From: Stylophora pistillata
Taxonomy: Eukaryota
Direction of reading: 5' to 3'
DNA length: 64,000 bases
NCBI RefSeq assembly: GCF_002571385.2
Contig: NW_019218016.1
Span: 178,011-242,010 of the forward strand
The notes beneath the pieces are model-generated. The model did no database searches. It was given only the letters and a program-made list of their open reading frames with translations, and was not told the DNA's origin. Below, piece after piece: positions 16,981 through 45,400 of this stretch. Position 1 is the stretch's first letter; each line of letters starts with the position of its first letter. The position numbers and the translations under genes are program-made.

Positions 16981-19900
16981 AGCATGTCACTGTCCTAAGC
17001 ACGTCCCTGTGTTCCTTCCTCTGTAAGATGTATGTTATCATTGGTTCTGGTTTTCCCTTCATAGTAACAGGTCCTCGCTTTTTGAACACAAAGTGATCAT
17101 GTGGCTGGCACAGCAGTGACCTGAAGTCAAACAAAGTCACAAATTGCAATCAATGAATAACCTCTTCACTCCCAAGGTATAAAGACCAATTTTCACTGCT
17201 GTCTGCCATCAACATGTAACTTACCATCCAAATTTCAGTTCATTATGAATTCAATAATCATGGCTGTTGACAAAGGAAGGGGTCAGGAAAGGCCAAATCC
17301 CTGTGGATGGAATCCCTGGGAGGGGTATCCCTGAGGAGTGAATTCAATAATTGCAGCTGGTGACTGAGAAGGGGGAGAGAAAGGCCAAATCCCTGTGAAA
17401 GGAATCCCTTGGAGGGGGATCCCTGAGGGGTGGATTCAATAATTACAGCTAGTGACTGAGGAGGGGGAGAGAAAGGCCAAATCCCTGTGGATGGAATCCC
17501 TGGGAGTGGATTCAGTAATTAGGGACCGAGGAGGGAGGAGGGAAAGGCCAAAATCCCCAAGGGTGGTATCCCTTGGGGTGGTATCCCATGGGGTGGTTTC
17601 TCTGAAGGTGACTAAGGAAGGAGAAGTGAAAGGCCAAATTCCCTGGGGGTTGTATCCCTGAGGAAGATGGCCAAAACTTGGGGGAGGATGTAAGGCCTCT
17701 GGAGACAACAAATGAGTTGGTTGGCCCATAAGGGTCATGGAAAAACAAAATCATCTCGACCCATTTCACCTAATCAGTGACACACCTGTAGGCATATTCT
17801 GTCACATTTATCTTTCCTCGCAGTCCAGTAGTTTCTGTACGACTTGTCAGGTTGACAGTGTTTCCAAATAGGCAGTAACGGGGTTTCTTCTGTCCAACAA
17901 CGCCAGCAACAACCTCTCCAGAATGAATGCCAACTGTGATCTAACACAGGAAAAGCACATCTCTCAGAGTTCACACTATAGTTTTTGTTTTAAAAAAATA
18001 ATAATAATTACATTTTTTTTAGCCCAAATTCCATGTTAATACGATCAAATCTAAAGCCTTTTAAGGACTTTTTAATACCTGCATCTTTCTCCCTTGTGCA
18101 TTCACTTCCTGAACAATGTCGATCATGTCAAGAGCAAGATTTGCAATGTTTGCAGTGTGATTTGTGCACTTTGTTGGTAAGCCACTCACAGCCATGTATT
18201 TGTCTCCAACTGTCTCAACCTGTAAAATGAGTGTAAGGTGCAGTAAGGTAAGGTAAGGTTAGGACTACACATCAACAGAGCTGCCCACAGAAGAAAACAA
18301 AAGGAACAAATCTGTCCTTGAGAGTCCATCACAGGTCCCCCGCTCCTCTCTCCTCCTGGAGAAACCAGGTTGTACTCCTGGGTGGAGAGAGGCACTTAGA
18401 AGAAATTGTGTCGCACAAGAAAACAGCATGATGACCTAGCCTGGTCTCAACCCAAGCTTCTTAGTCCAGAGTTGAGCCTGCCAACCACAAGGGCAGCACC
18501 TCTCCTTCAGAGTGGCCAAAAGAGCTGAAGAGCACTTTTCCTTCCCCAGCAATAAAATGACTCAGAGTATTGCTTTGCCTCCTCAATGAGGTCACAGGTC
18601 CATCTCAGATTGTCCTCTCATCTTTCATTTAGTTTCATAATATTTCTTTCATACCTATTCATATTCTGTGCTTTAAATAGGCAACACGTCCCGCAAAATG
18701 ATACAATACAATAACCATGGCAGGGGCTTCAAAACAGCCTCTCGCTCACTTGCTAACCGGTTCTCTCGCATACTAAGGGTAGGGTAGCATCTTCCCAAAA
18801 TTGGCTCTATTTTTTTAAAAGAGACATTTCAACTAAAATAGCAAGTATGCCTGTTCTCCCAGAATGTTGTTGATATTGTAATATTATACCTTAAAAACTT
18901 CATTGTTCTTGTCTGCCAGAGCATCAAATCTGATATATGTGTCATTCAAAAGTTCCACGATTTCCATAGGTTCGCTGCTCTGATTACAATAATTTGTAAA
19001 ATCCACAATACCACTGAACATAATTGTCACAATCTCATATTTTTTGGCCATCACTGGTCGCTTCAGTCTGAGGTCATTTGCAACTGATGACGGTAAGATG
19101 CTGTAGAGGAGTCTATCAGTGAGCTGCTGCTCCTGCTGCAGTTCACGTGAGGTCTGCTGAAGCTTGTCAGTCAGTATCTCAAGTCGCTGAGACAGACGTG
19201 ATTCTGCATTATGCTGTTCAGAGAGTAGAATGAGATCCCTTGTGGCATCATGAATTGGAATGTCACTGAGGTACAAACCTATCACATAAATAAAAACAAG
19301 TATCAATAATTGAATTCACATGGGTTGTCATGGGGACCAGATGCCACTAAAAATTACTTGACAAGAATGATAACAAGATTCTCCTTCTCATTTAGTAGAC
19401 AGCAGTCTTCACCCTCAGCGAACCTGAGCCTTGGTGAATAACTTAAAATACTATAAAAAAAGAGTATAACAACTTTGGAAGATAATTTATATTTTGATGA
19501 TGGGGGATATGGGTTTACAGAACTTGAGCAATCCCTCCTTTTCAAAAAAGTCTGTTGTATAAGTAATTGAGATGTAACCAACTCAAAAGACAGACAGGGC
19601 TTGACACTAACAGTAGCTTGACACTAACAGTAGCTTGACAGGGCTTGACACTAGCCACAGACTAGTAGAAATTCAGTTTTGGCTAATGGTTTTTGCTTTC
19701 CACCAGCCAGTTTGGCTAGTAAACAAACTGAAATTGTTGTAACATCTAAGTTGTCACCTGCCACTTGGCTAGTAAGTTGAAAAGTTAGTGTTGTGCCCTG
19801 ACAGACTTGGCTGAAAAGGAGGGAGTGCTCAAAGTCTAATGGGTTTATGTGAAGTGAATCATACCAATTTCATTGAGACCATCCAAATTGAGAACACTTG

Positions 19901-22355
19901 GAGAACATAGGAACATAATGCTATCACATTCGGGAAGGTACATCATTTGACCACGAAATCTCATTGTAGGAAAATCCAAGGTACCCACATCATCTTCAGA
20001 AACTGTTGTCAAGGTAGCAGAGTCTAGAAGTCCTTCTTTTGTTTTAACAACATACACCTTATTGATAAATTGCAAAATATTATCAAATGTCAGCGAAATG
20101 TGTGGACGAATACATTCAAACATTTCACCCACTTTAGTTTCACCAACTTTAATAGAGGGTAAAACTCGCAGCAACGAAATTCCAGCTTGGTAAATAACCA
20201 TTTCATTGTCAAAGAGAATGTGAAAGGGACATGCTTGGCAGAAAGTCTGGCTACTGATGCGAGACCCCAATGTAACAAGCTCCAACTTCTGTTCAATCTT
20301 TTGAATCTGCTCGTCATGTTGTTTCAGATGTATCATATCTTCATAGTTCTCAGGTGTAACAATAATCTTTGACCAAGTCTTCTCCTGGTTTGTAGGCACA
20401 GCTACCTCAATGTTCACCTTGGTGTTGTAAACCTCTCTTGCCACTGCTTTCACAACACCCACAACCATATACTCAAGCCCTGACCTTTCAGAATAATAAA
20501 GGATTTCTAACCCATTGCCATCAGGATTATCTTTGGCGTGAAATGAAGGTGCCCGCATACCAGGGAAAATATACAACAGATGCTCATGCAGAGCATCCAG
20601 ACTGTTGAAAAAGTCCTTGAGGTTGCTTCCAAGACTGTCCAACATTTTTTCATAGCCAGAGTTTTGGCAGTACTCGAAGAATATTTCCCCAAATTTCTCC
20701 AAGATCACATTGTGCGATAACCCTAATACAGATTGGTGTTTCAAATTAGTTATCTTGAAAAGTAAAGTTTGTTGACTAAAATTTATGTACGAGTCACTGT
20801 GTGGATATTAAATGACCTAAAATCCTAGGGGAGTGGGTGAGGGAGGAAGAAGGAATTAAGGTATTATACAGAAGGTGATAACTAGAAAAGTATCATCCAA
20901 GGGATATTGTCAGATTTAAAAACCAAATTCCAAAGGTATCCACTGCCAAGATCTCATTCTCAATTCTCTTGGCTGTCAGTCATACATCTCTACTAATTTA
21001 GTATCTGATGCTCCTTAAAACAAAAAGAATACACTTAAATCGAAAAAAGAATAAGTTGTTTGGCAGCCATAAGAGTCAAAACCAATTAAAAGAGGTCCTT
21101 TAAAGATTATCTGTCAGAAAAACACAGATTGTCTTTTCCTGTGTGCAAAAGGTATTTTGCATCTAAAGTAGCTGTTAATGCCAGTGTCAATTTGAATAAC
21201 CTATTGTAGACGTGTCAAAATCAATCTGGTGCAATTGTCAAAATTGTTATCACCTAAGTTGTGGAAGAGAAAGACAAATCCCTCTTCGAGATAATGCACT
21301 AAAGTTCTTGCTCGATGATATTTTTTCAATGTACTGTGGCAACTTGCGGCATTGTTTACAAGCATGCAAAAGTACCTTGATGCAGTCAAAACGAATTAAA
21401 GGCTTGATCGTATTAGTCTTTGTAAGACTAATTTTTGATTTGCACACGGCAGAATTCATCTGGATTCTTACTTCTTTATCATTACCAATAAAAGCTGACC
21501 TTTTTTAAAAGTTTTGTCAAAAGAGTTTATCGAAATCTAACTGAATCACTTTTAGAATACGTACTATACAGTTATGGTTCATGAAGTTGCAAAGCAAGCC
21601 CTTCACGAAACAAAAACGAAATATAAACATAAAATGAATTTGCCCCTCGGTCCAGTTAACGTTAAAAATTTTATTTTTCACATAGTTAAAACTTGTCATA
21701 AGAAGTCATATCGGCTTATAAAATACTTGCTGTCTAAATCCGCGAACGAAACTGCCAAATGGTGATTTCGTGCAATTGCTTTTAATTCGTTGTCACATTC
21801 AGAACTAAACCATTCCACAAAGGCATAAATAAATACAAATAATACCGCAATTTCTAACGCGTCGACCGGCATTTATCGATATTTAGCTTCTTCAGAAATC
21901 GAGGGGCATCTATATAACCACAGATCCGAAGACAGGTAATATTGGAAACCCAACTGTGACCGTAACAGTAAGCTAATACAAGTACAAAATGTAAACTCAC
22001 CGAGAACTTCCGAAGCGACTCTTAACAGGTCAAATGTATTTTGATCATCATATATTCGCCGTTGATTGAATTCTCCTGTTTCTCCTAAATCGATATTTGC
22101 TTTCTTCCTAAGGAGATAAAGATTAAGAGCAATCGATAACATTTCAGCTAAATTCTGGATTTTATTAATGGATACACGAGCAATACCGTTTTCCCTTCGC
22201 GCGAGATGCATCGCTTACGCGCTTCAAAGCTGATAACAAAAATTAATAAACAAACGAAATATGTTTCATTATACATACAATATTTCTTCCCAAGTTCCGA
22301 AGCTGCTCTCTCGCAATACCAAATCTTGCAAAGCTTGGTTTACAAAGCCATACAT
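16970..22355 (-). CDS. GUCY1B1: Soluble guanylate cyclase beta1-like subunit (H-NOX, PAS, coiled coil, cyclase), ~625 aa
   Basis: Exons 22355-22279 ([13 protein letters not shown]), 22107-22001, 20722-19865 ([13 protein letters not shown]), 19278-18890 ([10 protein letters not shown]), 18219-18079 (VETVGDKY), 17940-17786 ([20 protein letters not shown]), 17120-16970 (RGPVTMKGK). Total 1878 nt, in frame. FSG, GDKY and NLTSRTE are beta1 signatures. Confidence 0.93.
17270..17660. repeat. Diverged G-rich tandem repeat (~90-110 bp unit, ~5 copies) in the last sGC-beta intron
   Basis: Recurrent GAAAGGCCAAATCCCTGTGGATGGAATCCCTGGG motif. Confidence 0.8.
19595..19800. mobile_element. CAGGG-terminated MITE; second copy at 50445-50635
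   Basis: CAGGGCTTGACACTAAC ... GTTAGTGTTGTGCCCTG; the two copies share an internal body. Confidence 0.8.
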
Positions 22356-25367: not shown

Positions 25368-28300
25368 TTATAACGTAGTCTCAATTTTTTGGCTCAGTTC
25401 TACCAATTCCGTTAATGACTCCTCATCCATTCCGATCAGGGAAGCATCGCCATTGATGTTTTTATGGCCACGATTACTGTCTTCTATTTCCTCATCATCA
25501 TCCTCAGCTTCGTCAAAACTCTCGTCTCTATTGAAGCTGCTTGCCTTGCGTATAGGACACAGAGAGGTCACAGTGATTCTCCGTTTCTTAGTGTGTTTGT
25601 TTCCTTGCTCATTTTTCAACATCTCCAGCCTTTCGTTTACCGAAGAGGCAAAATCAACCGAGCTGATTCTTCGCTGGGGTGGGCCGTCCGGAGAGCTATT
25701 GCGGTAAGCGGCCGGTCCTGTATCACTTCTTCGCTTTATCGCTGGAGAGTGCGTCGGAGAGGTCCTCGGGGACCGAAACATGCAGATGTTGTTTGGTGCA
25801 ACGGATGCCGCGATATCCAGAATGGACGGCTGTTGTTTGGCGTTCTTGCTTCTGATCAGGAAGAAGCATGGGAGGGGGTTGGGGATCTCATTGTTGGGAA
25901 TGAACTCGAATTCAGAGGAACCTTTGAGAAAGCTGCGCAAAAAGAAAAAAAAAAAGCAGTTATAGCTGAGAATTTTGAGTGCACGAGTCCACGACGAATA
26001 TTGTGTCTTCTCAGAAGATTACACAATCAATCAGTGCTTCAGTCAATGAATCAATCAATGAATAAGTCAATTGATCAATCAGAGAGCCGGTTGGTTGGTC
26101 AATGAGTCAGTCAGCCGGCCAGCTAGCTATAGTCAACCCAGTCAGCTACCGAGCTGAAAGTCAGTCGGTCAGTCAGTCGGTCAGTCAGTCAGTCAACCAG
26201 TCAGTAAGCTAGCAAGTAAGTCAGCCAGGCAGTCAGTCAGTCAGTAAGTGATCAGTCAGTCAGTCAATCCCTCAGTCAGTCAGTCAGTCAGTCAGTCAGT
26301 CAGTCATTCAGGCACTTTGTCAGTCAGTCGCTCAGTCAGTCAACCAATCCATCACCCATTCAGTCAGCCGGCTGGTTAGTCCGTCAGGCAGCCAACCAAA
26401 CAACCAGTTTGTCCGTCAATGCATCCGTCAGAGGGTCAATCATTCAGAAATTGCCTTATTTTTAAGTATCGTAAATCTTATAATTCAATAAACAACATGA
26501 TTCCCATTACAGGTTTAATCGTCCCTTTGCTGCTATGTTAGTAAGCTCTTATTGCTACTCACCGTTTAGTCTCGTAGCTGACGTTAATGTATCCTGGTTT
26601 ACTTCCCGATTCCATCTTGTTTGCCAGTGTGACAGTGCTTCCAAACAAACAGTAGCGGGGCATCATTTTGCCAACAACTCCAGCCATAACTGACCCACTG
26701 TGAATTCCGATTCGAATCTGCCAAAGAAATAAACATTCCCAGAGTAATCTTAGTTACCACGATTTGCTGACTGGCATTGCTGCGGGAATGAACACAGGGA
26801 AGGGGGGAGGGGTAGGTAGGGAAGGATACACAGACATTTAGACGCAGTACACCCTCAAACCCTTGTTCGCTCTCCCCCACCTTCCATCGAACTCAATTAC
26901 TTAGTTCTTATTAACCGAGCGGGAGGTCTGTATGGGAAAATCTTGACCAAGGTCGCCAGTACAGACCGAACGCAGTGAGGTCTGTACCAGCGACCGAGGT
27001 CAAGATTCTCCCATACAGACCGACCTAGCTCGGTTAATAAGATGTTTATTGTATGGCTGTGTCTTATATGCCAATTTTTTATATTCTTTGTACCTTTTTT
27101 TTCTAGACCGGTCTAGATGCCGTTCTAGATGGGAGAATCTAGATCGCTTTCACTATTGATTTCAGCCAATCAAATTCGTGAATTCGGTAGTTCCCAGTCC
27201 TTGTGAGACACAGCCATACAATAATGACTTTTAACACTGGTTATGTAACCTATGACAGGCTCCTAGTCGGTAGAAACCAGTAAAAAAGAAAGGTAGTGGG
27301 GTCGCCTTTTCAAATTTTTTTCCATCCCACCCTTTCCTGTCACTTTCCATTACCCATGCGTACTTGTTCTACACTCATTTCGCGCTCTTTAAAATGCGAG
27401 ATGGTGTAATGGTGTCTCTTCTTTTCTCGGGACCGCTCAAGAAACCAAAGATCTGTCCCTTGAATTATCGTATGTGTGTTTAGAGCAATTCACATCTAGT
27501 ACCTTAAGAGGAGATTTGTCAACAGGCGACAAAACCTTTCGAGAAGCTTCCATCATCGAGCATGCCATGTGGGCCACCCTCTCTGCATGATTATCACATG
27601 GCTTTGGTAGACCCCCGACAACCATGTAAGCGTCGCCAATTGTCTCCACCTATGTGATGTGAAGAAGAAAGTAGGAGAATGAATACATAACAACTCTTGC
27701 TTTGATAACTGCTAAGAGAAGGAAGCTGAAAGAAAAAGCACATTCAAACCCTAATCTTATACATTTCTGGAGGGAAACAACGTTCCTAAGAAAACGATCT
27801 TCTTTGAGCGATCTCTCAAAAAATCTAATGCACAGAACGAAACCAAAATAAAAAACAATACTAAACACGAAAGTACGAAAAAATAAAAAAAACCGGTTGA
27901 AATTCGTTATGATATATACAGCAAAGTGTACGAAGGGAACAGTCCTTATTCCCAACACCTGTGTGGAAAAGAAAAATTGAAATAAATGCTGTTTCAAAGA
28001 CAATGTTTTTAAACGTTTTTAGTCCAAACATCGATCATCCATGGAGAAAGAACCGCTTTGTTGCTTTTTAAGTCAAAATGAATTATTTAAATTTGGTTGG
28101 TATTATAACAGTGACTGGATAAAAGCAAAATTCAATTCTAGTTTCGGCTGATCCTAAGGGTAAAAAAAAAATTCAAAATTAATCTTGAAAGGATATTAGG
28201 GAAGGGGCGGTAGATTACGAAGATAAATTTTAAATGTTTATCCAATTTTCCTTGTCCTTTTTTTGCCAAACTAAATATAGCTGAGTTAAGCAGTTTTCTT

Positions 28301-31300
28301 TTTTCCTTTTGGTTTACAGACGAAACAATGAAACACGCCAGAAACTTCAAGACATAAATTGTAAATAAGGCACTTTCTTGATAAAAAAACGCCATTTTCA
28401 CGAAACACTTTTAAGCGATTTTGACTATAGAAGATAGATAGAAAGTGAGATGCTGTAAGATTATGTAAGTCAATTTGTAGTTTAAATAGTGTTTCGTCAT
28501 TCTTCTTTACTCAAAGTGTGAGTAACGATCAATTTTCGTTCGAAAGCTACGGAAAGAATCCTAGCAATCAACGAATGCAAATTCACTCCAAAACACCGCA
28601 TCTCATGATGAGATGACTTTGATAAAAAGCGGCTATGAACCTAAAGAGGTCCGAAATGATGACTTTATTGGATCAGATAAATGATACAGTTAATTCTAAA
28701 TACGGATTTTGTATCTTGCAAAAATCCTTCTTCTCAGAGTGTTATAATTACTGAGGTTAATTTAAATCTCTCAGAACTCCTTTTCTTCTCTCTTAACAGC
28801 TTGCAGCCAACTTTCGATGTTTCCGTAAAAACCACAATGATAAGATGTTCAAATAAAGAATTACCTATAAACACATAAAAATTGCTCGAGGACAGCAGGT
28901 AATCTGTTTTTTAAAATTAAAAATAGCACCAAAACGCAGAAACACGCGAGGGAGAATCTGTTCATCTATCTATGTTATTTTTGTTTTTTCGTTTCTCTTT
29001 AGAAAACTTGAATCTTTCTCCTTGGATTATTCCCAAGCGTTTTATACTCCATGCGAGAACATTTCAACTATGGATTCACTTCAAACTCCTTAAGAAATAC
29101 CCTGTCACTTCGCTTATGAATAATCTATAAATTTTGTCAGTTCATGCAAAATTCATAATTTAAACTGCAAACTAAAAATAAACAGAAAAAACTGCTTGAG
29201 ACTGAACCCCTTTTTTTCTTTGACACTCCCACAAATTGAAATTAAAAAATGAGAAGTTTTCTGATAGGCGTGAAAACTTCGCACATATTAGCAAAAAAAT
29301 GATAAATCTATCAAGGAGACAATTCGCAGATTCGACAAAACTTGACAATGTCTGCGGTGATAATATTGATCTCAAACATTATTTCGATAAAGATGGAAAA
29401 CACATTATTTTTCATTACCGCTAACCATGATTAGACTATCATACACAGAAATAGCGTTATTAATTTGAAGGGTAAAAATATTATTCCTTCGACGATAGTC
29501 AAAATAACTGATGACAAAAAAGTTATTTTGGAGTTTTTAGTGTAAATTTTGTAGACATTAAAAACCTGATGATAAGTTACTACTTTATTGAAAAAAAAAA
29601 CCCACAAAAACAAAGGTTGGCATTTGGAGGGCAATAAGGTAACTTTTTAACACTCGATCTCCAGTGTAGCGTTTCCACTAGCCTCTAGAAATTTCGTAAG
29701 TGGAAAATCTGAAACATTTCCTCGTATTTACGTATTGCTATTCAAAACGTTCTCCGGCAAATTCCGCATGAGCATGCTTCGTTATGTTTTTCAACTTAAG
29801 CCTTTAATTTTTCTGCTTTCCTCTTAGAAGCAAATAAACAATTTTGTTATGGTGGAAATATCCGGGGTCGAAATTGCAAAAGAAGTCCAATCGAAAAAAT
29901 CATTTTTTCGGCCGTTGCAAACTAAGCTAAGAGCCACTACAACCTTTATCAAAATATACGTTTACTGTGAAGATGAAATATGTTGCGTGGGGTCATATCC
30001 GAAGATAGATGATAAATAAAACCCGTTCATTCAGGAAGTCTCAAAAGCGTTTCAAAGAAGTGAGACTGTCAGAGAATTCAAATATCAGGGGAGGTGATAT
30101 TTACATAAAAAGTTTGAACACAAAATAGAAATGATGAGAGATTGAAAATTGTGTCGATGAAAATGAATTCCGCGGTAAACCTTTCAATATGAATTATTGA
30201 TACTAAAGCGAAAAGAAATAAAAATTAAGATTTTTATCGATAAAATTCAGATAATGAAGGAACAAAAGTGACAGATTTGTGCTGTTGAAGCGTCCATAGA
30301 AATGCGCGAACAATGAAAACAGTCGGTTGTTTGAAGAAGTTATAGAATTTGAAAGAAATATTATCTTCGTGTCCTCGTGACAGTTATATGCGAGGCGTGA
30401 GATTCATCGAGATCAGAGTTGTCATCGCTAATAAAATATAAGCCCGCTAAAGGAGATGAACCGAGTTCGAAGGGTTATTTTAAACAGCAAAGCCACCAAC
30501 GGTGAAAAAAGACGCAGGCTTAGTGTTCCAGCGTTTTGGTAAACACTTGTCAATCACAAACAACCTTCTCTCCCACAAACACAAAAGCAGATTTAAAAGG
30601 AAAAAAATAAGGTTATTATTCTTACCTTGTAAACATCGTTCATCCCACTCAACATGTCAAAGTAGGTGTAAAGCTTGTTCAGCATCCGAACGATGTCCAT
30701 GGGAACAATTTTGTCGTCGGAACATAGCGCTGTAAACCCGACGATGTCGCTGAAAAGTATAGTAACCAGCTTGTAGTTTTCCGCGGGCACCGGTTGATTT
30801 AACCGCAGTTTAGCCGCGACTTCTTGGGGCAGAATAGAATGCAGCAATTCGTCTGTGCGTTTTTTGTTTTCCGTGAGCTTTACCTCCAGTTTCTTCAGGT
30901 CGTTGCTAGTTTCCTCTAACTTTTCCACCAATTCTCGCTCGGCTCTTCTTGCCTGTGACATGAAAATGAGGTCACGCGTTGCATCGTGAACTGGTATATC
31001 ATTGAAAAAAATACCCAGGTTCTTAAAATTGTCTAAGTCGTTTGCCCGAGGGGAGCACAAAAATAGAATGCTGTCGTTCGTTGGAACATAAATCATCTGA
31101 CCCTTGAGGCGTAGTAATGGATTTGTAAGGATCATTCTCTGATCTTCTCGACCGTCTGACTCGTTGGACATTGTATCCGCCGCAAATCGCAGCGCGGACT
31201 GTTTTACTGTCACAATAAAAACTGTATTTATGTGCGCAAGAACAGAATCAAACGAAAATTCCATACGCGGTCTTGACAGTTCGAAAATTTCCGTGAACGA

Positions 31301-32500
31301 GAAGGCACTGCCGGTTGTAAACCGTTTGCTCAGAAGGCGCATCATGGCAACCCCAGTTTGCGTGATGTTAAGTTTATGATCGAACATCACGTGAAATGGG
31401 AAAGCTTTGCAGAATGACAACAAACTGAGCCCTCCTCGCCGCTTCTTGTCCATGTTTTCGCCATCCGAGGACAGCTCCGCACTGTGATTATCTACCATGG
31501 TTTCTAAATCAAACGCCTGTAGCCCAAGTTTTGATTGCGTTGCATTTTTGCAGCCTGTCTCTCTGATTGCAAATATGACATGTCCGCGATCGTCGGATCG
31601 CGCTTGCTGCACACACACTTCCACCTCGGTGTCAAGCATTTTATTCGCTACTGCTTTAACGACTCCGATAACGATGTGTTCCAAACCTTGTCTCCGTGAG
31701 TAATAGTGTAGGAGCAGTGTTCCATCAGGAGTCTCGGTACAGCGAAAAGACGGTGCTTCCATACCTGGGTAAATCGTAGCGAGATGATCATGGAGCGCGT
31801 CCAAGTTACATAAAAAATCTCTCAGATTCCTCCCCAGCACTTTCAGAATCCGATCATAGCCGGTCTGCAGACAGTAATCCAGAAAATGTGAGCCAAAAGC
31901 TTCCAAAACAGCGTTCAGGGGTAAAGCTGAAACAAGTCAACGAAGCAAATTTTAACTTTTTTTATTTTAAAATATCTCGCGCGATAGAATTACATTTGCG
32001 ATAACCTTAGTTAAGACTGGAAAGAATGTTCTTAAATAGGATTTACGATATATATCAGCCCATAAGACCTCTGTCTATAGAAAAACATTTTTGTAATAAA
32101 TAAAATACAAGCTGAACAGTTCACTATATTGCATACCCAGAGTCTCGCAAGCCGCAGCGACCAAACTCAGAGTTTCTTCATCATCATAAATTTTGTGAAT
32201 TAGGTATGATCCGCCGTCTAATTCCACCCCAGCCTTCTCGCTGAAAGAAGAAACAGAAAGAACATAATTGCACTGCAGAGCGGCCTCTTTCACTTGCAAC
32301 CCATTTAGGCGTTTCAAAAACTATTAATGTCTTCTTACACGATAGATCGCCATACGTCTTCGCCAAACTTAGAAACCACCAAGTCCGCCAGAGCGCAATG
32401 AATGAATCCATACTGTGAGCGAAACAAAGATGCGTTTAGTAACACGCAACACAGATAACTTAAGCGATCTTTGAAAGCGGGAGCAAGGAAATCTTACCAT
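25368..32500 (-). CDS. Soluble guanylate cyclase with alpha-type catalytic domain and intact beta-like H-NOX, ~782 aa
   Basis: Exons 32500-32498 (ATG only), 32412-32339 ([12 protein letters not shown]), 32240-32137, 31926-30626, 27649-27503 (VETIGDAY), 26717-26563 ([18 protein letters not shown]), 25932-25368 (ends KIETTL*). Total 2349 nt, in frame. [12 protein letters not shown] and VTLANK are alpha signatures; no MKGK motif. Confidence 0.9.
26030..26450. repeat. (CAGT)n/(CAAT)n degenerate microsatellite
   Basis: Long runs of GTCA repeats. Confidence 0.9.
26908..27223. repeat. Double palindromic interspersed element in an sGC-alpha intron
   Basis: Hairpin 26908-27040 (TTATTAACCGAGC...GCTCGGTTAATAA), then a second inverted pair TTATTGTATGGCTGTGTCT / AGACACAGCCATACAATAA (27046-27223). 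Confidence 0.8.
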
Positions 32501-35500
32501 ATTTTTGTTGCGCTTCACAAGTTCAGCCCCTCTGTGTCAAACTTTCGGCGCTCTCTTAATGATTTCCTTGATTGTTTTAGGTGTTAGTCACGTGTCATTG
32601 TATCTCCCACGGCATCTAGGCTGTAATTACTGATAGCTCAGGCCATCCAATCACCTTGAAGTGCCTTTGTCAATAAGGCACCTTAGCCTCGTATCTGCAA
32701 AGCAACCGGCTTGTCAGAATTCACTGCGACTAATTGCGCGTCTAAAGCCTAAAACATCTGATATTGCATTTACGTTCGCAAAAGTATCAACAAGGCTTAG
32801 TAAAAACTTCATACAATAGATAAGTTTTAATTCGCATGACACATAACAAAGTTTAGGACGGAAATTCTGATTTATTCATCCAATTTTCCACGCATTCTCC
32901 GCATTCAGTGTCCGAAGTAAACAAACAATTCGCTCTGCAATACGTAAGGTGTCGAAGTCTTATCGCGTAGAATATGTTTCCTGTGTGCTTTCATTTCAGC
33001 AATCACGATTTTGTTTTCCTTCACTTTCTGTTGCGATTATTCAGAAACGACGAGTTGACGTCAGCGATCGCTAACACTGTTTCATCGAGCGTAGGTCAAT
33101 TACGGATTTAAACCCTCGAGGCAACACAAAAATGCGACGCTACGATGAAGGACTTTATTGCCATATCTTTGTATTGTGATAGAAAACGTCTCGTGAACAA
33201 ACACCACGATAGTTTATTATGTGCAAAGTACAATCTTGTACATACCAATTCTGAAGGTTCAAAATCCAGTTGCTCATAAAATAAAACAATGTGATGTTTA
33301 TGAAAGCATCCCGTAGAGACAATGAAATCCTCGAATATCAAATGCCCTTGAGCAGGTAGCGTCTTAGTAAAAAGCGACCACACGTGTTTTGGCTTAACTG
33401 CCCATAAACCAAAATAAGGGAACCGAAAAGCCATTAATATAATTATTTGCCATACGAGTGTCATTTCTTCGCCCGCTCACGTCTATAATGCATAGATGCG
33501 TAATAAACTTGGCGACCTCTTAGTGAAAAAAAATTAATAGGTTGCCCTCATTTTGACTTTAGATGAAAATATTCGAAAGGTGTCTGCGGTTATCATGACT
33601 ATATGCGTTTTAAATTCGCGTCGCTAGCTGGTGATCTATGTAGTTTAGAGGACACTAAGAAGATCTGTCATAAAATAAAGCAAATTGAATACCCCACTTT
33701 TACCGAGACGTTGATATCTTTTCAATCTGTTTCTGCTTTCAATAAACACTCCTCGACGACCTTGTATGTCAAAACAGTAATGATGTATAACCTTAGTTCA
33801 GTAGCTTTATTCCAGGTCTCCCGACGAACCAGTTCACAGACGGACGCACTTTGCCTTGATGTAGAAATGACTTAGGCAAAGGGGCCGACATGAAACAACG
33901 CTTTCCAGGCGTTTTTATTTTTGTAAACTACGGAAGTGCAATTAACGCATGAATGGGCTCACCTTTTGAGAGCTTCAAATAAATTCTGTTTGATTTGGTC
34001 CGCGCATACACAACACAACCTTCGCAGTACAAGTCAGAAAGATGAAAGGGATGTAGATTATAATCCTGGACAATCGTAGTCTTGTCGTAGTTCCTTTAAT
34101 TCAAGTGAATATGACCTAAGCAGAAGCGCACGCAGTTGCTAGGTAGCGGTGCACAGAGAGGTTCTTAATTTGAATATATTACTTTTAGGCTAAAAGGATG
34201 TAAATTTTCAGCGGAAAAAAAACCAAAACAAAACAAAAACCGACACGTTACGCTTAAAAAAAAAATGTAGGAATTGTTTTTATTTTGTTTTGTAGCTTTC
34301 CTTTTACATAGTTCATTTTAAAATATTGGTAATCGTTTTTGTAACGGTCTTCAAAATTCACGGAAAACTGTCAGAAATTGAATTTCAATACTATCGATTT
34401 TAGAACAACAGATTCTCCATTTAGCGTACATTTGGAATCCAAGCGTCAAAAAGGTTTAACAAAGACGTCCATTGGACAATGGAAAATAATATTAGCACCA
34501 TAGAATATTGTCTCCTCTATTAACTATGAGGTAATGAATCAAATTTCGTAGAGAATATACCAACATTACAGATTGCATCTAATATTTACAAAGATCCTGT
34601 GCCACAAATCTGAAACATGAAAGCAATTTTAAAATCCATTACGTGAAAGAGCTTTTGGTACAATACATATGTGATTTCATTGGCTGCCAGTACGTTGCAT
34701 AGACCCTTCTATGTTAAGTCTCGGTGTACTAAGAAAGCACTATATATTCAAGGCTATAGATTAAAAATCAAAACACATGTGAAGAGCAGAATGTCAAAGA
34801 AAATGTTTTTATGTAATTAAAAAAAAGTGGAACTCACTAGTGGCTAGAAAAATAACAACATTATCAGCCAAAATTTCTTTCAGCGTGATTCATACATAAT
34901 ATTCAATTAAAAAGTACGATTCTTAACCAGGAACTCAGCATCTTCTGTATTCAATTCACAAACCTCCCTAATGAATTAACTGAAACCATCAAAAGTAATC
35001 TCAATTTAACCTTTTTTCTCAGAAATCAGATACTGTAATTTTTTTTCTCAAATGCTCGAGCACTTAGTCGAAAGAAGCATCTACCTTGACCAATTGCCTG
35101 GTGTAGAACCTTCGGACTCAAAATTTAGCTCTGAAAAAACTTAAAAAGCAGCTCTCGAGTTTTCCCCCAAGAAATTCACGGGGCGATCAAATTCGCCTTA
35201 AGGCTAAAAATTTCATTTTCTAATTATGTGAAACAATTTTCTGGCTTTAGAAGCAGTAAAAAGTGTCATTCGGATCTGAAAACCCGTGGTTTTGGATCGC
35301 AACCAACGCTCCAAGTGTTCCCATTGAAACAATTTTTTTTGTTTTGCGTTTATCTAGTTTACCTCCCGGGATGTGGTCTTCAGATTGAGTTGTGTCTGTG
35401 AAGAGAGATTTGTATCTGCAACAGTCCATGAAAATAAGTATTACCACTTTGATTTTTCCATACAGTAGCTCAGTACCTTCTCAGTGATTGTTCAGCTCGA

Positions 35501-35689
35501 TCCACGATAGCAGATTTTCTCGCAACGATCTTCGTTTTCTTCAAAGGTTGTAGTGTTCACATGGAGCTGGAACCTCGCTGGATTTGACAAAGCACACACA
35601 ATTATTGAATACTTTTATTCTAACGTTCTCAACTTCCCAATTTTAGCAAATTTTACGCGATTTCGTTGCTGTAGATTATATGCATACAA

Positions 35690-35960
35690 ATGCACTAAGC
35701 TTCGCATATGAGCACAAGGTCCACTTATTTATTCGTGATGTCTTAAAGAGCAGCGTAATTCCAATAGGAGAAATAGCTGATTATTACTACAGAGTTGAAT
35801 TTCAGCAAAGAGGTAGCCCACATATCCATAGTTTATTTTGGGTAAAAGAAGCCCCACAGTATGGAAAAAATTCTAATGAAGAAATTTTGAACTTTGTTAA
35901 AAAATATATCACTTGCCAGAAATCAGATAGCTCCAGCGAGATGGAAGAGCTAATAATATT
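35690..35960 (+). mobile_element. Helitron Rep (HUH endonuclease) fragment
   Basis: YYYRVEFQQRGSPHIHSLFWV is the Helitron Rep HUH motif region; no flanking helicase. Confidence 0.85.
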
Positions 35961-37944
35961 TGAAATTCTCAGATGTATCCAGCTAATTAGGTCAAAACCT
36001 TTTATGAAATTAATACGTACTTCTTTCAACGAACGCCATGGTTTCCATCGCTTTCACATTTGCAGACGCCTATCGCATTTCTTGATACGAAATTTATTCA
36101 ATTAAACGTCTTCTGTTGATAAATACGTTTCATTTCAGGCCGCAATTCCATCAATCGAGCGAGTGACTGGCCACTGTAGCAAGCTTAATCGTCTCCGCCT
36201 GTTCCTTTTCGATAAGTTTAAGCCAAACTTGGGCTCACGCTGAATATCAATGTGTGGGCATGACATTACATCTCGACAAAGAAGATGATACGGTATTTTC
36301 TAGATAAACATGTCATGTTGGCTTAAATGTATTAGTCGTTGAAATAATAATATAACATATAGACACTATCGGACGATACCAAAATTCTCTTCCATATGTT
36401 TCTGCTATACCAATCCTTCCACAAGAAGAGCACATTCAGAAAGTCTAAGAAAGAAACTCACCACAACATCCTTGAGGAAGACTTTTTGCCGGAAAAACAG
36501 AGTTTCTGCTTCCGTGAGTTCCCTTTAGGCAACACAAAAGTAAATTTCCATATGTAATGCTGTGTCGATGTAAAATGGGAAAATTATAATAGTGAGCTGA
36601 AATGTTTAAAATTCACAGTCCTTTGTAATATGTCGACGCAAAAGGCAATATCTTTTCTTAGTATTGTATGCGGCATTGATAAAAATATTTTCTTAATTGT
36701 TTCCAACTGGACATTCGCGCTCGCTACCTCACGGAGAAAATTCTAGATTTTTCTAACAGGTTATTAGATTTTTATTGATCTATTTACTACCCATGCCAAC
36801 CATCCACAAAGCTATTTCATGAACCAGACTAATTCAAACACATACTTAAAATGCTAATGAACTTCATCTCTGAATGTTTATTTGAAAGAGCACTTCTATG
36901 TTTTGACTATATGGGCGATTGGTAATATTTCAAATTGTTTTTTTTTATTTTTATTTTTTTTATTTTTTATCTTTTCAAGGAATGAGAATCTTCGCTCAGA
37001 CGTCAAAGTGACATTTTAAGAGATCTGACAAAGCCGGCATACCTTTACTAATCAAATTAGTCCAGAAAAACAAACTCTATCTCATCGAGAACAATATTTT
37101 TTTTTCGACACGGAGGAAGGAAGAAAGTATCGATAATTTTAAACGAACCCCTTAAGGAAGCAGAGCATTATTTCGTGATCGTATCTCAATAAACAAACGC
37201 CCCTTCTTCATGTGTTATGCTCATCCCTTCTACGTACCTTAATAGCTCCCGGAGGGGTCACTTCCCACGAAGTGATTTTAACCACTCCCTTTACATCATC
37301 AGCCTTCAAATCATCGCTTAGTTATTCTGGGACGTTCCTTTCTCCATTACAGTGAATTCCTCATAAGAAAGTAGTATTAAAGCGATTCATACCCGGAATT
37401 TATAAGATACCGCAAACTAATTTGAAGCCACTAGAAACCTTGTTAACCTTCGACTCTAGCAAAAGCATTTCTAATTTTGGGAAGTACTTGAGAAAAACAT
37501 GATGCGCCATTAAGTGCTCTCCAAATGAACAGGATTCTTTGATTAAGATACCCGTCAACGCATTCTCCCCAGTATATCGTGACGACAAGATGGGGGTAGT
37601 CTTTGGTAAAAATATCAACATTCAGTGATATCATTGCGAACCACAGAGGCTTAGTTAAATTTGGAAATCCTGCCAACCGTCTCTGTGGCTGGCCTTCGCT
37701 CAGGGGAGACTGGAACTGAAACAGGCTTGAGACACCCAAAAGAAAAAATGTGTGATAGATGAAAAAAAAAAATACTTAACTTAGAAATGCGTTAATTGCT
37801 TTAAGCTTCAGTACGTAAAGTACCATAACCCGAGTGTTAAAATTTATTACATCCCATAGTGCTGGCAAGGCGAAACAATCTGTTAGTCATTGCTTTACAA
37901 ACAGAAATAATGGTCCCATTACTTTCTCTTTCTTTACATGATTA

Positions 37945-38535: not shown

Positions 38536-38799
38536 NNNNNNNNNNNNNNNNNNNNNTTATTATTATTATTATTATTATAAATTTCATGCGATATAGCCAG
38601 AAAATGATCGTGACTTTAGTTCCACCCCCCAATCACTTTGTTCGAACGAGGTAATACTGATATCATCATGTAATATCTACAAAGTACCTAGCAGGAAACA
38701 GCTGAATGCCGATTCAGCCGATTCATTTTTACCTCATGGGTTTCAAGGAGCCTTAAATTTTTTAAGGGAAAGGGTGGTGGGGGGGGAGGGAAGCATCAT

Positions 38800-42424: not shown

Positions 42425-45400
42425 CTACATGTGTAAAAATATTTTCCCATATGGCCTTTCAAAAGGAAAGGTCGTTTTCTGCACACACTTCTTTGCCTTC
42501 AAAGCAATGTGTCCCTCTAAATACACATTGTCGTAAAGATCACCCAGAAACTCAGTACCAGGCCCTTGGATGAGACCACGCAGGTTTTTGACAAACTCCC
42601 TCTTTGTCATTTTGTTTTTCACATGCGGACTGCTCAGATCCACACTGAGAAGAATCAGCGAGTGGCACAGTATAAATACACTCTCTAGAAAAGGGAAATA
42701 CAAACCATCAAACCATGAGTTACCGTATACTGAAGGTAGATAAGCAGTGATATGGCAGTGATGACAGAGTAAACAACAGGGCGGAGAGGGGGGGGGAAGG
42801 GGGCACACAAACAGCCAGGAAGACAAATTGCAAAGGTGGTAGATGAACAGATACACTAAGAGAGACTGGCAAAAAGGGAATGAGGATGTCTGCTACCCTT
42901 TCTTGCCTCTCCTACCATGTCTGCCTTTTGGCCTCCACAGACTCAGTTCTCCTCACCCCTTGTTCCTCTTTCATCTCCAATAACCCCTACTACCCATCTC
43001 CCCCCCCCCACTCCATCTTGTCACCCCTCCTACTACTCCTCCTGCATGTCCTTCCACATTCAAGTCAGGTGTGAAGGCAGGCTTAGAGCCATTTGCACTC
43101 TATAGTGAATCAAATGAAGCATGAGTAAGGAAGAGAGATTTAAAAAATTGGACAGATGAATTGGAGCAAAAGAAAAAATTGAGGACAAGCAAGAAAGGAG
43201 GGAAAGAAGAAAAGGAGACGGTTTGAAAGTGGTACAGAAAGTCAAAAGAAAAATGGCAAAAAGGAAATGCTCACGAATAAAGACAATAGGAACAGCCCAG
43301 AGAAACTGCCAAGGGAAAGAGAGAGGGAGATAAAGGGAGACAAGTTACTGCAAGTAAATGTACATGTAGGTACAAAGTAGCAAACCACAGCTGAATACTA
43401 ACCTGGTGTTAAGGATGTGCTAGGATTTGTAGCACAGAACGGAATTGAGAACTTGTTTAAAAGGGTGTCTAAGAATTCTCCTCTTTGTTCGGGGGGATAC
43501 ACTCTTTCAAAAAACTGCCTGAAATTAGAACAAGAGTTTCATATCCACTAGGTCACAGCCTTGAGCTTCTCAGTAGTTTCAAGTGGGACTGTGTGGCCTA
43601 AAATTGTTCAGGTAAGAGTTGTCCAGGTAAGAATTATTGTTGGCTTAAGTGACTGATGTTTTGACAATCTGAGGGGAAATTATCATCAAAGTTGAGTAAG
43701 GAATTAATTGTCAGTGAAGTAAGTAAAGTTGCGAAAACTGTTTGAACCTTAGGAAAAGAATCATTAATTACAATTTACCTTAATGCCACAGGCAAAAATA
43801 TCCCCTCATAACGCTGCATGTTCACAATTTCTTGCAAGATGTCTCTTCTACAAAAAAAGTAATAAAAAATGAGATTCTTAAGGGTAGAGATGAAGAGAGA
43901 CTTGTTAAACATTTCGAAATGGAACACACCATTTATCTTCTATGAGTGTTTGGTTATTCTTTAACCCTTTGACTCCCATAGGTGACCAAGACAGAATTTC
44001 TCCTTACAATATCATCACCAGAGCTCTAAGCTCAATTTTTCAAAAAAGTCGCCATTTGGCGACCTTCAATTGTAAAATGGTCACCATAAAAGAAATTTAG
44101 TTGCCCCTTCCCCCCCTCCTCAAAAAAAAAAACAGAAGGGGAGGACACTTCATGATANAGTACATGATGGGCTATTGCGCCGAAAGGCACGTTTTATCAC
44201 TTAGGTTTGCTACTGTAAGAGAAAGAAAAGGAAGAGACTGTCTAGTAGCAAAAACGATTTATTTGAACATTACAAAGCTGCTGAGACCGTGCAACATTGC
44301 CAATTGCCCCTTCAAATCGATCGAATTTGCCATTTTTTTACGCAGTCGAGTTTCTGAACAACGAGAGGTGAAAAGAGAAAGGCAGGTGATGCCACCCCTT
44401 GTACTATTGATTAAACTCATCCTATTGTTGGTAATTTTTCAAGTAAGTTTCTCTTTTAATCTGTTGGTCGCCAATTGGTGACTTTTGCCAGAATTTTAGT
44501 CGCCAAATATTTTTTCACTCGCCATGGCGACCAAAATGGTAGCAGCTTAGAGCACTGATAAAAAAATCAAGCAGATAAGTAATGAGAATGAAGAAAAATG
44601 TCAAATTCTCCAATCTAACATCAAAAGAATCATATGGGAGACAGTAAGAAGAATTGCTATTGAGAAAGGACTAAGCTCTTACCTTGTATTTAGATACTCG
44701 CTGACAGACTTTCCATAAAGTGCACCTGTACAGTTGATAAACTTTGCTATCTCCATGCATGAATCATCCAACACATTGTGTCTGACGAGATAACTTATTC
44801 CCTGGAATAGAAAGAATATGTTTCAACACTTTTGGTACTATCTATAAAATCATAACCAGATTTTAATCATCTTAGGTAAGCTTATAAGTGGTTAACTATC
44901 AGATGAATGAATAAATGGGGTAAGTTTCTAAAGAGACTGTCAGTGGTGCTGCGTCAGTGGGAGTTAAACGGTAATTTTGGTTTAATCAAATGAATTGATA
45001 AATGTAGATTGGCCACCATAGAGAGTTTCAAATCTTACATTTTGAGCATTAGCCCTTGGTCATTCACCCTGAAAAGGCACTAACACTCGAAACATCAGCT
45101 TTGAAACTCTTTAGGGTGGCCCATTTACATTATCAACGCAGTTGATTAAGCCAAAATTATCAGAGGAATGATTTGGGTGTCCTGTGCAAGTAGTTGGGAG
45201 ATCCTTTCAAAGGATGCCAGTAAATCACTGCTGATTCATGCAAACTGTAATTTTTTGCCACCCAAAAAATATTTTAAGGGAAGACTAGTACTAACAGAGA
45301 ATGGTGCCTAGCTGCTATTAAATACCAACATGAAAAAAAACTAATAAAAAATATTGATTCATGAGTTTGTCCGTGAAAAACAAAGACAATATAAAGTCAC

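What the first reader, a model, noticed from the sequence alone, without database searches (positions are those of the whole stretch)
30626..32500. sGC alpha-type subunit with an intact heme-binding H-NOX: candidate two-heme NO/gas-sensing cyclase
Seen: the cyclase half is alpha-type ([15 protein letters not shown], and VTLANK replacing the catalytic N..R; no MKGK). The N-terminus is a full beta-like H-NOX starting M-YGFIH, with the proximal His ([16 protein letters not shown]), the YxSxR propionate motif (YYSRR), and Cys at the beta1 C78, C122 and C214-equivalent positions. Around the His and YxSxR it resembles vertebrate beta1 more than the neighbouring beta gene does. Established: vertebrate and insect alpha subunits have a degenerate, heme-free pseudo-H-NOX. 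Inference: this heterodimer could bind two hemes, and may preserve the state before alpha lost heme binding. Automated annotation would likely mislabel the gene as beta.
Basis: partly seen in the sequence, partly recalled or inferred. Interest (0 to 1): 0.85.

Follow-up and report, generated by a model that had tools for sequence, protein, structure and literature searches.

The report
Heme-ready alpha-type guanylate cyclase subunit
A stony-coral gene encodes a nitric-oxide-receptor (soluble guanylate cyclase) subunit whose catalytic half is of the "alpha" kind but whose sensor half keeps every residue needed to hold heme, and it belongs to an old, overlooked animal-wide lineage that databases label "beta-1-like".

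Summary
On the minus strand, 32500 to 25368, lies a seven-exon, 782-codon sGC gene. PolyA RNA-seq contigs from four studies confirm its first four introns.

One 1301-nt exon carries four things in a row. They are a beta1-like H-NOX with the proximal His, YxSxR, C78/C122/C214 equivalents and no distal Tyr, then the PAS domain, the coiled coil, and the first catalytic Asp. This rules out a chimeric gene model. Later exons give the second Asp, the alpha signature VTLANK in place of N..R, and an alpha-like tail without MKGK.

The protein starts M-YGFIH. It lacks the N-terminal extension that blocks the heme pocket of classical alpha.

In cyclase-domain trees it falls in "clade A", sister to classical alpha (99/96). 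Clade A contains corals, Nematostella, a jellyfish, placozoans, Capitella, amphioxus, Strigamia, ticks and mites. All 73 clade A sequences keep His and Tyr. NCBI names them "beta-1-like".

This coral has no classical alpha. A beta1-type gene lies 3 kb downstream on the same strand.

Best reading: this is an alpha-type partner of beta1 that still binds heme, which would give two hemes per dimer. Heme binding and pairing are inferred, not shown. No paper in the searchable library describes this.

The parts
32498..32696 (-). Exon 1: 5'UTR plus the start codon ATG (32500-32498), which is the last three bases of the exon.
   Evidence: Sequence with donor gtaaga. RNA contigs reach 32695/32696 and join 32498 to 32412.
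32339..32412 (-). Exon 2: first H-NOX helix, [13 protein letters not shown]... It follows directly after Met, with no N-terminal extension.
   Evidence: joints 32412|32498 and 32339|32240. H-NOX profile positions 1-26.
32137..32240 (-). Exon 3: H-NOX residues 27-60.
30626..31926 (-). Exon 4 (1301 nt). It holds the rest of the H-NOX, PAS/HNOBA, the coiled coil, and the start of the cyclase domain. H-NOX features: His codon 31792-31790; YYSRR 31705-31691; Cys at the C78, C122 and C214 equivalents; Ile at position 145. The first metal-binding Asp is in FSDIVGFT (30748-30746).
   Evidence: Pfam. Alignment to human beta1. RNA contigs cover it whole. Coordinates.
27503..27649 (-). Exon 5: cyclase domain, ETIGDAY with the second metal-binding Asp (27634-27632).
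   Evidence: Pfam. RNA joint 30626|27649, and a loose end at 27503 that reads into exon 6.
26563..26717 (-). Exon 6: cyclase domain, VTLANK (26633-26616) in place of the beta1 N..R transition-state residues.
   Evidence: 63.5 bits to alpha1 against 52 to beta1, hexapeptide identical to human alpha1. Splice sites.
25368..25932 (-). Exon 7: alpha-like end of the cyclase domain without MKGK, a long low-complexity tail, C-terminus ...KIETTL, and the stop codon 25370-25368.
   Evidence: No Pfam family on the tail.
17015..22355 (-). Neighbouring beta1-type sGC gene and likely partner. It has MYGFVNQ..., [36 protein letters not shown] and [10 protein letters not shown]. Its start lies 3 kb downstream of the alpha-type stop codon, on the same strand.

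Best explanation
The gene encodes the alpha-type subunit of an NO-type soluble guanylate cyclase.

Its catalytic domain supplies the two metal-binding Asp residues. It lacks the Asn and Arg that stabilise the transition state, so it can form only one active site, and only together with a subunit that has them. The beta1-type gene 3 kb downstream is that kind of subunit, because it lacks the first Asp and has Asn and Arg.

Unlike classical alpha subunits, this protein starts directly with the H-NOX fold and keeps the proximal His, the YxSxR propionate clamp, Pro118 and a non-polar distal pocket. Its own sensor domain therefore most likely binds heme and NO rather than O2. The heterodimer would then carry two hemes.

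The gene belongs to an ancient lineage, here called clade A, that is sister to classical alpha. Clade A is the only alpha type in this coral, and the only alpha type recovered from any non-bilaterian in the sequences sampled here.

Shown: gene structure, expression, the residues, and clade membership. Inferred: heme binding, the choice of partner, and heme stoichiometry.
For: Structure and expression:
- One exon spans the H-NOX through FSDIVGFT, and RNA contigs from four studies link exons 1 to 5.

Heme pocket:
- It matches human beta1 residue for residue.
- There is no N-terminal extension, whereas classical alphas have an implied 37-263 residues (with one exception, a truncated urchin model). 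That extension occludes the pocket in human alpha1 (PMC8196705).
- Among 73 clade A sequences, His is kept in 73/73, Tyr in 73/73, Ser/Thr in 73/73 and Arg in 72/73. Position 145 is never Tyr.

Catalytic type:
- VTLANK is identical to human alpha1.
- The cyclase domain of the Montipora orthologue scores 189 bits to the alpha1 catalytic domain and 159 to beta1.

Trees:
- Cyclase domain: A+B+one sponge 99/96, A 98/78, B 100/100.
- PAS-CC plus cyclase: A+B 90/91.
- The A+B clade survives removal of the catalytic motifs (89) or of the tail (90).
- The H-NOX of clade A is a clade of its own (97/93) and is not nested in beta1. An A+B grouping of the H-NOX domains is not rejected (p = 0.21).

Genome context:
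- This genome has only five sGC loci and none is a classical alpha.
- A beta1-type gene lies in tandem.
- Clade A is linked to sGC genes in Trichoplax and amphioxus.

Complex prediction (Nematostella orthologues): weak support, ipSAE 0.43 against a best control of 0.00. The runs agree in at least 62% of contacts and the partner's pLDDT is at least 74. The mark was reached by 51 of 78 solved complexes and 2 of 108 mismatched pairs. At 0.60 or under, only 5 of those 78 solved complexes passed, as did all 4 mismatches that passed. A solved sGC complex exists, so this pass may come from memory.
Against: - No biochemical data exist. Conserved residues do not prove that heme is loaded in vivo.
- Once both the catalytic motifs and the tail are removed, 110 columns remain and the A+B clade is no longer recovered.
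- A cyclase tree that forces A with beta1 is 24.5 lnL units worse but is not formally rejected (p-AU 0.083).
- The PAS-CC and H-NOX trees alone do not resolve the order of A, B and beta1.
- The partner could instead be one of the three atypical sGCs of this genome.
- In Nematostella the beta1 gene is flanked by other sGC paralogues, not by the clade A gene. The tight tandem is therefore not universal.
- A Montipora isoform (P0012, 'X4') starts after the first H-NOX helix.
Confidence: 0.6

Rival explanations
1. It is an alpha-type partner of beta1 whose H-NOX keeps the motifs but is heme-free or only structural in vivo. The dimer would then still have one heme, as in mammals.
For: The alpha H-NOX is dispensable for dimerisation and regulation in mammalian sGC (PMC8196705). 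Some classical alphas keep single residues without binding heme, for example His in the moth and amphioxus B-type sequences.
Against: All four ligating residues are kept in 72-73 of 73 sequences across Placozoa, Cnidaria and Bilateria. The pocket-blocking N-terminal extension is absent. The H-NOX branch lengths are as short as those of beta1, against 2.5-5.8 changes per site in classical alpha. Such constraint is hard to explain without a ligand.
Confidence: 0.12
2. It binds heme but does not pair with the beta1-type neighbour. It would pair with an atypical sGC (contigs C33 or C402 of this genome), or act as a poorly active or inhibitory homodimer.
For: Three atypical sGC genes exist in this genome, and one has a complete catalytic set. 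The complex prediction for A plus beta1 gave only weak support. In Nematostella the A gene is not next to beta1.
Against: Catalytic complementarity is exact with beta1-type subunits (D,D,T,K against G,D,N,R). The two genes sit 3 kb apart on one strand. A and beta1-type genes are also linked in Trichoplax. A homodimer would lack both the Asn and the Arg.
Confidence: 0.15
3. Clade A is not of the alpha lineage. It would be an offshoot of the beta1 lineage that lost Asn and Arg independently. The mechanism would be the same but the history different, and it would say nothing about the ancestor of alpha.
For: The AU test does not formally reject A+beta1 for the cyclase domain (p = 0.083). Over the whole length the protein is closer to beta1 (506 against 325 bits). 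With the motifs and the tail removed, A groups weakly with beta1 (support 55).
Against: The best trees place A with B at 99/96 and 90/91. The hexapeptide VTLANK and the MKGK-less tail are shared derived states with classical alpha. The overall similarity to beta1 is explained by slow evolution of retained ancestral characters.
Confidence: 0.1
4. It is an artefact: a chimeric gene model, an assembly join or a pseudogene.
For: A fish database entry (P0072, Danionella) is such a chimera of alpha1 and beta1.
Against: H-NOX, PAS, coiled coil and the first catalytic motif lie in one uninterrupted exon. RNA contigs from four studies carry it spliced to both neighbouring exons. All seven coding exons are open, and 72 other sequences share the architecture.
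Confidence: 0.01

Closest known systems
Classical sGC alpha subunits (vertebrate GUCY1A1/GUCY1A2; insect Gyc-alpha-99B / Manduca alpha1)
   Same: - Both metal-binding Asp residues are present.
- T..K (VTLANK) stands in place of N..R.
- The C-terminal part of the cyclase domain lacks MKGK.
- It is the sister clade in cyclase and PAS-CC+cyclase trees.
- It lies upstream of a beta1-type gene on the same strand. The fused fish model P0072 reads alpha1 cyclase and then beta1 H-NOX, the same order.
   Different: - Classical alpha has a degenerate, heme-free pseudo-H-NOX on very long branches.
- Classical alpha has an N-terminal extension that fills the pocket.
- This protein has neither. Its H-NOX is more than 60% identical to beta1 around the heme ligands.
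sGC beta1 (GUCY1B1)
   Same: - The start is MYGF...
- The [16 protein letters not shown] block is identical.
- His105, Pro118, YxSxR, Ile145, Cys78, Cys122 and Cys214 all match.
- Whole-length similarity is highest to beta1.
   Different: - Beta1 has Gly in place of the first Asp.
- Beta1 keeps Asn548 and Arg552.
- Beta1 has the MKGK strand.
- The beta1 clade (100/100) excludes this protein.
Atypical sGCs (beta2, Drosophila Gyc-88E/89Da/89Db, C. elegans GCY-31 to GCY-37)
   Same: All subunits keep the heme-binding His (stated for the C. elegans proteins in PMC1435932). Heterodimers among them would also carry two heme-competent sensor domains, so the two-heme idea has a precedent there.
   Different: - Those proteins form other clades.
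- The O2 sensors among them have a distal-pocket Tyr.
- The active ones keep the complete catalytic set.
- This protein has Ile at the distal position and an alpha-type incomplete set.
- This coral has three such atypical genes elsewhere (contigs C33 and C402).

Membership tests
sGC alpha subunit (catalytic definition) | Both metal-binding Asp residues of the class III cyclase fold are present (human alpha1 D486 and D530; numbering from my own knowledge). | tested here: met
   FSDIVGFT and ETIGDAY are present. Profile columns read D,D.
sGC alpha subunit (catalytic definition) | The transition-state Asn and Arg of beta1 are replaced (VTLANK in human alpha1). | tested here: met
   The hexapeptide VTLANK is identical to human alpha1 in the alignment to 4ni2_A.
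sGC alpha subunit (catalytic definition) | The cyclase domain groups with alpha subunits in a phylogeny. | tested here: met
   A+B 99/96 and 90/91 on 384 columns. Caveats: the AU test for A+beta1 gives p = 0.083, and resolution is lost when the motifs and the tail are both removed.
sGC alpha subunit (classical, as described in the literature) | Heme-free pseudo-H-NOX: the proximal His and/or YxSxR is missing, and an N-terminal extension occludes the pocket. | tested here: not met
   His, Y-x-S-x-R and Pro are all present, and the protein starts M-YGFIH. Definition taken from PMC8196705.
sGC alpha subunit | Forms the active heterodimer with beta1. | tested here: inconclusive
   Catalytic complementarity and tandem position support it. 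The complex prediction on Nematostella orthologues gave weak support only: 0.43 against a best control of 0.00; 51 of 78 solved complexes and 2 of 108 mismatched pairs reached the mark; a pass at 0.60 or under is weak. An experiment is needed.
sGC beta1 subunit | Heme-binding H-NOX with His105, YxSxR and a non-polar distal pocket. | tested here: met
sGC beta1 subunit | Catalytic domain with Gly or Ala in place of the first Asp, with Asn and Arg retained, and with the MKGK strand. | tested here: not met
   The columns read D,D,T,K and there is no MKGK. The protein lies outside the beta1 clade (100/100).
Atypical O2-type sGC (beta2 / Gyc-88E / GCY-35 kind) | Distal-pocket Tyr and a complete catalytic set, or membership of those clades. 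| tested here: not met
   Ile stands at position 145. The catalytic set is T/K rather than N/R. The trees place the protein away from all D,D,E,N,R-type clades.
Heme-bound H-NOX protein | Actually carries heme. | not testable with these tools
   Only the sequence determinants and their conservation could be checked.

The most novel reading that the evidence does not exclude
In the evolution of the NO receptor, catalytic asymmetry came before sensor asymmetry. The first alpha/beta heterodimers had two working heme sensors. Clade A/beta1 pairs in corals, sea anemones, jellyfish, placozoans, amphioxus, annelids, myriapods and ticks still work that way, with an NO response shaped by two hemes, for example graded or cooperative. 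The classical heme-free alpha of vertebrates and insects would be a later, fast-evolving copy, probably made by a tandem duplication such as the one still visible in amphioxus.
Probability: 0.45. Interest if true: 0.8.

Novelty: new variant of a known kind. Interest (0 to 1): 0.68.

Why it matters
[quoted passage not shown] Here is a natural, expressed alpha-type subunit with an apparently intact heme pocket, and it is conserved across at least six phyla.

This makes three questions directly testable with ordinary protein chemistry:
- whether a two-heme NO receptor exists;
- what a second heme does to NO sensitivity and to the two-step activation of sGC;
- in what order the heterodimer lost its symmetry.

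It also flags a systematic annotation error. These genes are named 'beta-1-like', which would distort any count of alpha and beta subunits in invertebrate genomes and any reading of NO signalling in corals, where NO is tied to stress and bleaching.

Tried and rejected
- Chimeric model or assembly join: rejected (single exon, RNA contigs).
- Recent domain swap from the neighbouring beta gene: rejected. The H-NOX of clade A is its own old clade with the same internal order as the cyclase tree, and the neighbour's H-NOX is more divergent.
- A hidden classical alpha in this genome: not found. An HNOBA scan of the 397.6-Mb assembly gave five sGC loci and three receptor-type cyclases. The tool warns that counts are lower bounds.
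- Tight A-to-beta1 tandem as a universal feature: not supported. In Trichoplax a beta-like paralogue lies between them. In Nematostella beta1 is flanked by other paralogues. In amphioxus beta1 sits about 9.6 Mb away, measured in a different assembly.
- Timing of the A/B split: unresolved. The free tree puts the duplication before the placozoan-cnidarian-bilaterian splits, but a clade of B plus bilaterian A is not rejected (p = 0.146).
- PAS-CC and H-NOX trees alone leave the order of A, B and beta1 open.
- Literature: six searches and reads of Fitzpatrick 2006, Moroz 2020 and 2023, Reyes-Rivera 2022, a 2026 preprint and the Wittenborn-Marletta review found no description of a heme-competent alpha. 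Subscription journals are not covered.
- Look-up of the Montipora gene's surroundings: not on record.
- Complex prediction: weak support only.
- The spliced 782-residue protein was never joined and sent to a search tool. Exons were searched by reference, and the Montipora orthologue P0012 served as the full-length proxy in searches and trees.
Full report
**What is there**

The window is eukaryotic DNA of 33-45% G+C. The closest named relatives of the encoded protein are from stony corals: Oculina patagonica 83% over half the query, Montipora foliosa 75% and Desmophyllum pertusum 70%. The source is therefore a scleractinian coral, which I cannot name to species.

The gene lies on the minus strand. 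The start codon ATG (32500-32498) forms the last three bases of exon 1 and is followed by the donor gtaaga. Exon 2 begins YGFIH.

The whole coding region has seven exons: 32500-32498, 32412-32339, 32240-32137, 31926-30626, 27649-27503, 26717-26563 and 25932-25371. The stop codon is at 25370-25368. This gives 2346 nt, or 782 codons.

**Expression and splicing**

PolyA RNA-seq runs from four different studies hold the stretch. Their contigs show four GT..AG joints at exactly these exon borders. One 1724-nt contig runs from the 5'UTR (32695) through exons 1, 2, 3 and 4 into exon 5. A loose end at 27503 reads on into the next exon, IRIGIHSG.

These are contigs, so nothing can be said about expression level.

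**The two halves**

Exon 4 alone matches Pfam HNOB, HNOBA and the start of Guanylate_cyc. Exons 5 and 6 continue the cyclase domain. The heme-binding region and the first catalytic motif share one uninterrupted 1301-nt exon, so the architecture cannot be a gene-model chimera. One such chimera does exist in a database, for the fish Danionella (P0072).

Sensor half, aligned to human beta1 (6jt0_B, 344 bits):
- The gene matches Cys78, the 16-residue block around His105 (identical), Pro118 and Cys122.
- It also matches Tyr135/Ser137/Arg139, Ile145 and Cys214.
- Ile at position 145 means the distal Tyr that stabilises O2 is absent.

A 130-residue H-NOX segment scores 139.6 bits to human beta1 and 150.2 to Manduca beta1. 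The same segment of the neighbouring beta gene scores 119.5 and 117.9.

Catalytic half:
- Both metal-binding Asp residues are present ([15 protein letters not shown]).
- The beta1 Asn..Arg pair is replaced by VTLANK, letter for letter as in human alpha1.
- The end of the domain lacks the MKGK strand, which the neighbouring gene has.
- For the Montipora orthologue, the isolated alpha1 catalytic domain scores 189 bits and the beta1 domain 159. The whole protein scores higher to beta1 (506) than to alpha1 (325) because of the sensor half.

**Not a coral oddity but a lineage**

The same combination is found in these taxa:
- Cnidaria: Nematostella and the jellyfish Sanderia
- Placozoa: Trichoplax and haplotype H4
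- Annelida: Capitella
- Cephalochordata: amphioxus
- Myriapoda: the centipede Strigamia
- Chelicerata: ticks and mites

NCBI names the Montipora, tick, mite and amphioxus proteins 'beta-1-like'.

I call this group clade A and the classical alphas clade B. The named members of clade B are all bilaterian: rat alpha1, lepidopteran 'head-specific' cyclase, and alphas from Lineus, Lottia, Owenia, sea urchin, scorpion, amphioxus and Strigamia.

Among 73 clade A sequences the conservation is as follows:

| Position (human beta1 numbering) | Residue kept |
|---|---|
| His105 | 73/73 |
| Tyr135 | 73/73 |
| Ser137 | 69 Ser, 4 Thr |
| Arg139 | 72/73 |
| Position 145 | never Tyr |

Complete clade A proteins start MYGF... 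without an extension. Clade B proteins have an implied N-terminal extension of 37-263 residues, with one exception, a truncated urchin model. [quoted passage not shown] It adds that the His is missing in human alpha and the YxSxR in moth alpha, and that in the human structure an N-terminal extension runs into the pocket (PMC8196705). Clade A lacks all three obstacles.

**Trees**

Support is given as ultrafast bootstrap / SH-aLRT.

| Data set | Result |
|---|---|
| Cyclase domain, 73 rows, 185 columns | A+B+one Oscarella sponge sequence 99/96; A 98/78; B 100/100 on a long stem (0.84); beta1 100/100 |
| PAS-coiled-coil + cyclase, 384 columns | A 99/96; B 100/100; beta1 100/100; A+B(+sponge) 90/91 |
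| H-NOX | A 97/93 and not nested in beta1; B 95/95 with end branches of 2.5-5.8 changes per site |

Within clade A the branching order is Placozoa, then Cnidaria plus Bilateria.

The A+B clade survives removal of the three catalytic motifs (SH-aLRT 89) or of the tail (90). It is lost when both are removed and only 110 columns remain.

AU tests:
- Forcing A with beta1 on the cyclase domain costs 24.5 lnL units, p = 0.083. This is disfavoured but not formally rejected.
- Holding the H-NOX domains of A and B together costs only 2.3 lnL units, p = 0.21. The domains do not disagree, and no domain shuffling is needed.
- Holding B with the bilaterian members of A is not rejected, p = 0.146. The A/B duplication may be older than the cnidarian-bilaterian split or may date to the bilaterian stem.

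**Genome context**

An HNOBA scan of the coral's own assembly (397.6 Mb) finds five sGC loci: this gene, its neighbour, and three atypical genes on contigs C33 and C402. One atypical gene has a complete catalytic set and one lacks the first Asp. No classical alpha appears. Clade A is thus the only alpha type here.

The neighbour is a beta1-type gene ([22 protein letters not shown], heme residues present). It starts at 22355, 3 kb downstream of this gene's stop codon, on the same strand. This agrees with the scan's own note s1-773192.

Elsewhere:
- In amphioxus the clade A gene and the clade B gene lie 35 kb apart on one strand.
- In Trichoplax the clade A gene, a beta-like paralogue and the beta1-type gene lie within 55 kb on one strand.
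- In Strigamia the two alpha types have consecutive accessions.
- In Nematostella, beta1 is flanked by other sGC paralogues instead.

**How it most likely works**

Class III cyclases form their active site across a dimer interface (established knowledge). One chain gives the two metal-binding Asp residues. The other gives the Asn and Arg. This protein can give only the former and the neighbour only the latter, so together they form one active and one pseudosymmetric site, as in mammalian alpha1/beta1.

The new element is that this alpha-type chain should also hold heme and bind NO, so the dimer would have two sensors. Heme loading, partner choice and the effect of a second heme are inferred.

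A complex prediction with the Nematostella orthologues gave weak support:
- The score was 0.43 and the best control 0.00.
- The three runs agree in at least 62% of their contacts, and the partner's pLDDT is at least 74.
- The mark was reached by 51 of 78 solved complexes and 2 of 108 mismatched pairs.
- At 0.60 or under, only 5 of those 78 solved complexes passed, as did all 4 mismatches that passed.

Since an sGC complex has been solved, the pass may reflect memory of that structure.

**Novelty**

The precedent for two heme-competent chains in one dimer is the atypical O2-sensing sGCs of flies and worms. PMC1435932 notes the conserved His in all seven C. elegans subunits.

For the NO-type alpha/beta enzyme I found no description of a heme-competent alpha in six literature searches and six papers read. 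A 2026 preprint recovers 'GUCY1A1-like' sequences from placozoans and anthozoans but does not look at heme residues. The library lacks most subscription journals, so prior description cannot be excluded.

I rate this a new variant of a known kind, of solid interest to the sGC field, with the biochemical claim still open.

The spliced protein was not joined for any search. Exons were searched by reference, and the orthologue P0012 stood in for the full length. The N runs (10753, 38536-38556, 44158) were not touched.

Noticed in passing
window 25368-25388 (-): The protein ends ...KIETTL and the Montipora orthologue ends ...KIDSTL. This looks like a class I PDZ ligand, as another note of this scan says. 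Other clade A proteins (P0034, P0045, P0081) end differently, so it is not a clade-wide feature.
   Followed up: partly
window 35680-36102 (+): This ORF matches the end of Pfam Helitron_like_N (E 1.9e-10). It is probably a Helitron transposon remnant about 3 kb upstream of the sGC gene.
   Followed up: partly
window 42428-42856 (-): This ORF matches part of a Sec7 domain (E 3.6e-11). It is probably an exon of an Arf-GEF gene.
   Followed up: no
window 20328-20774 (-), neighbouring beta1-type gene: The H-NOX of the coral's beta1-type gene is unusually divergent: end branch 1.5-1.6, 45% identity to Nematostella beta1, and Ala in place of Cys122. It still keeps His and YxSxR. In this genome the alpha-type gene has the more canonical sensor.
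   Followed up: partly
G000 contigs C33:137.6-146.4 kb (-), C402:72-79 kb (+), C402:179-181 kb (+): Three atypical sGC genes start MYGLLLEN or MYGMLLES. One has a complete catalytic set. One lacks the first Asp (FSYLDNF), like Drosophila Gyc-89D as I recall it. This may be a second, O2-type heterodimer system in the coral.
   Followed up: partly
P0012 (Montipora foliosa 'isoform X4'): This annotated isoform starts [14 protein letters not shown]. It therefore lacks the first H-NOX helix encoded by exon 2. An alternative first exon may produce a form with a damaged heme pocket. In this window's RNA contigs exon 2 is included.
   Followed up: no
P0137 (Oscarella pearsei, sponge): A sponge sGC with heme residues and a D,D,S,N catalytic pattern groups with the alpha lineage, on a long branch with weak support (92/59 and 66/23). 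This hints that the alpha type may predate the Porifera split.
   Followed up: no
window 27618-27647 (-): RNA contigs from other, more deeply covered transcripts join the ETIGDAY exon at 27618. This is most likely a de Bruijn-graph overlap with another cyclase transcript sharing this conserved stretch, not alternative splicing.
   Followed up: no
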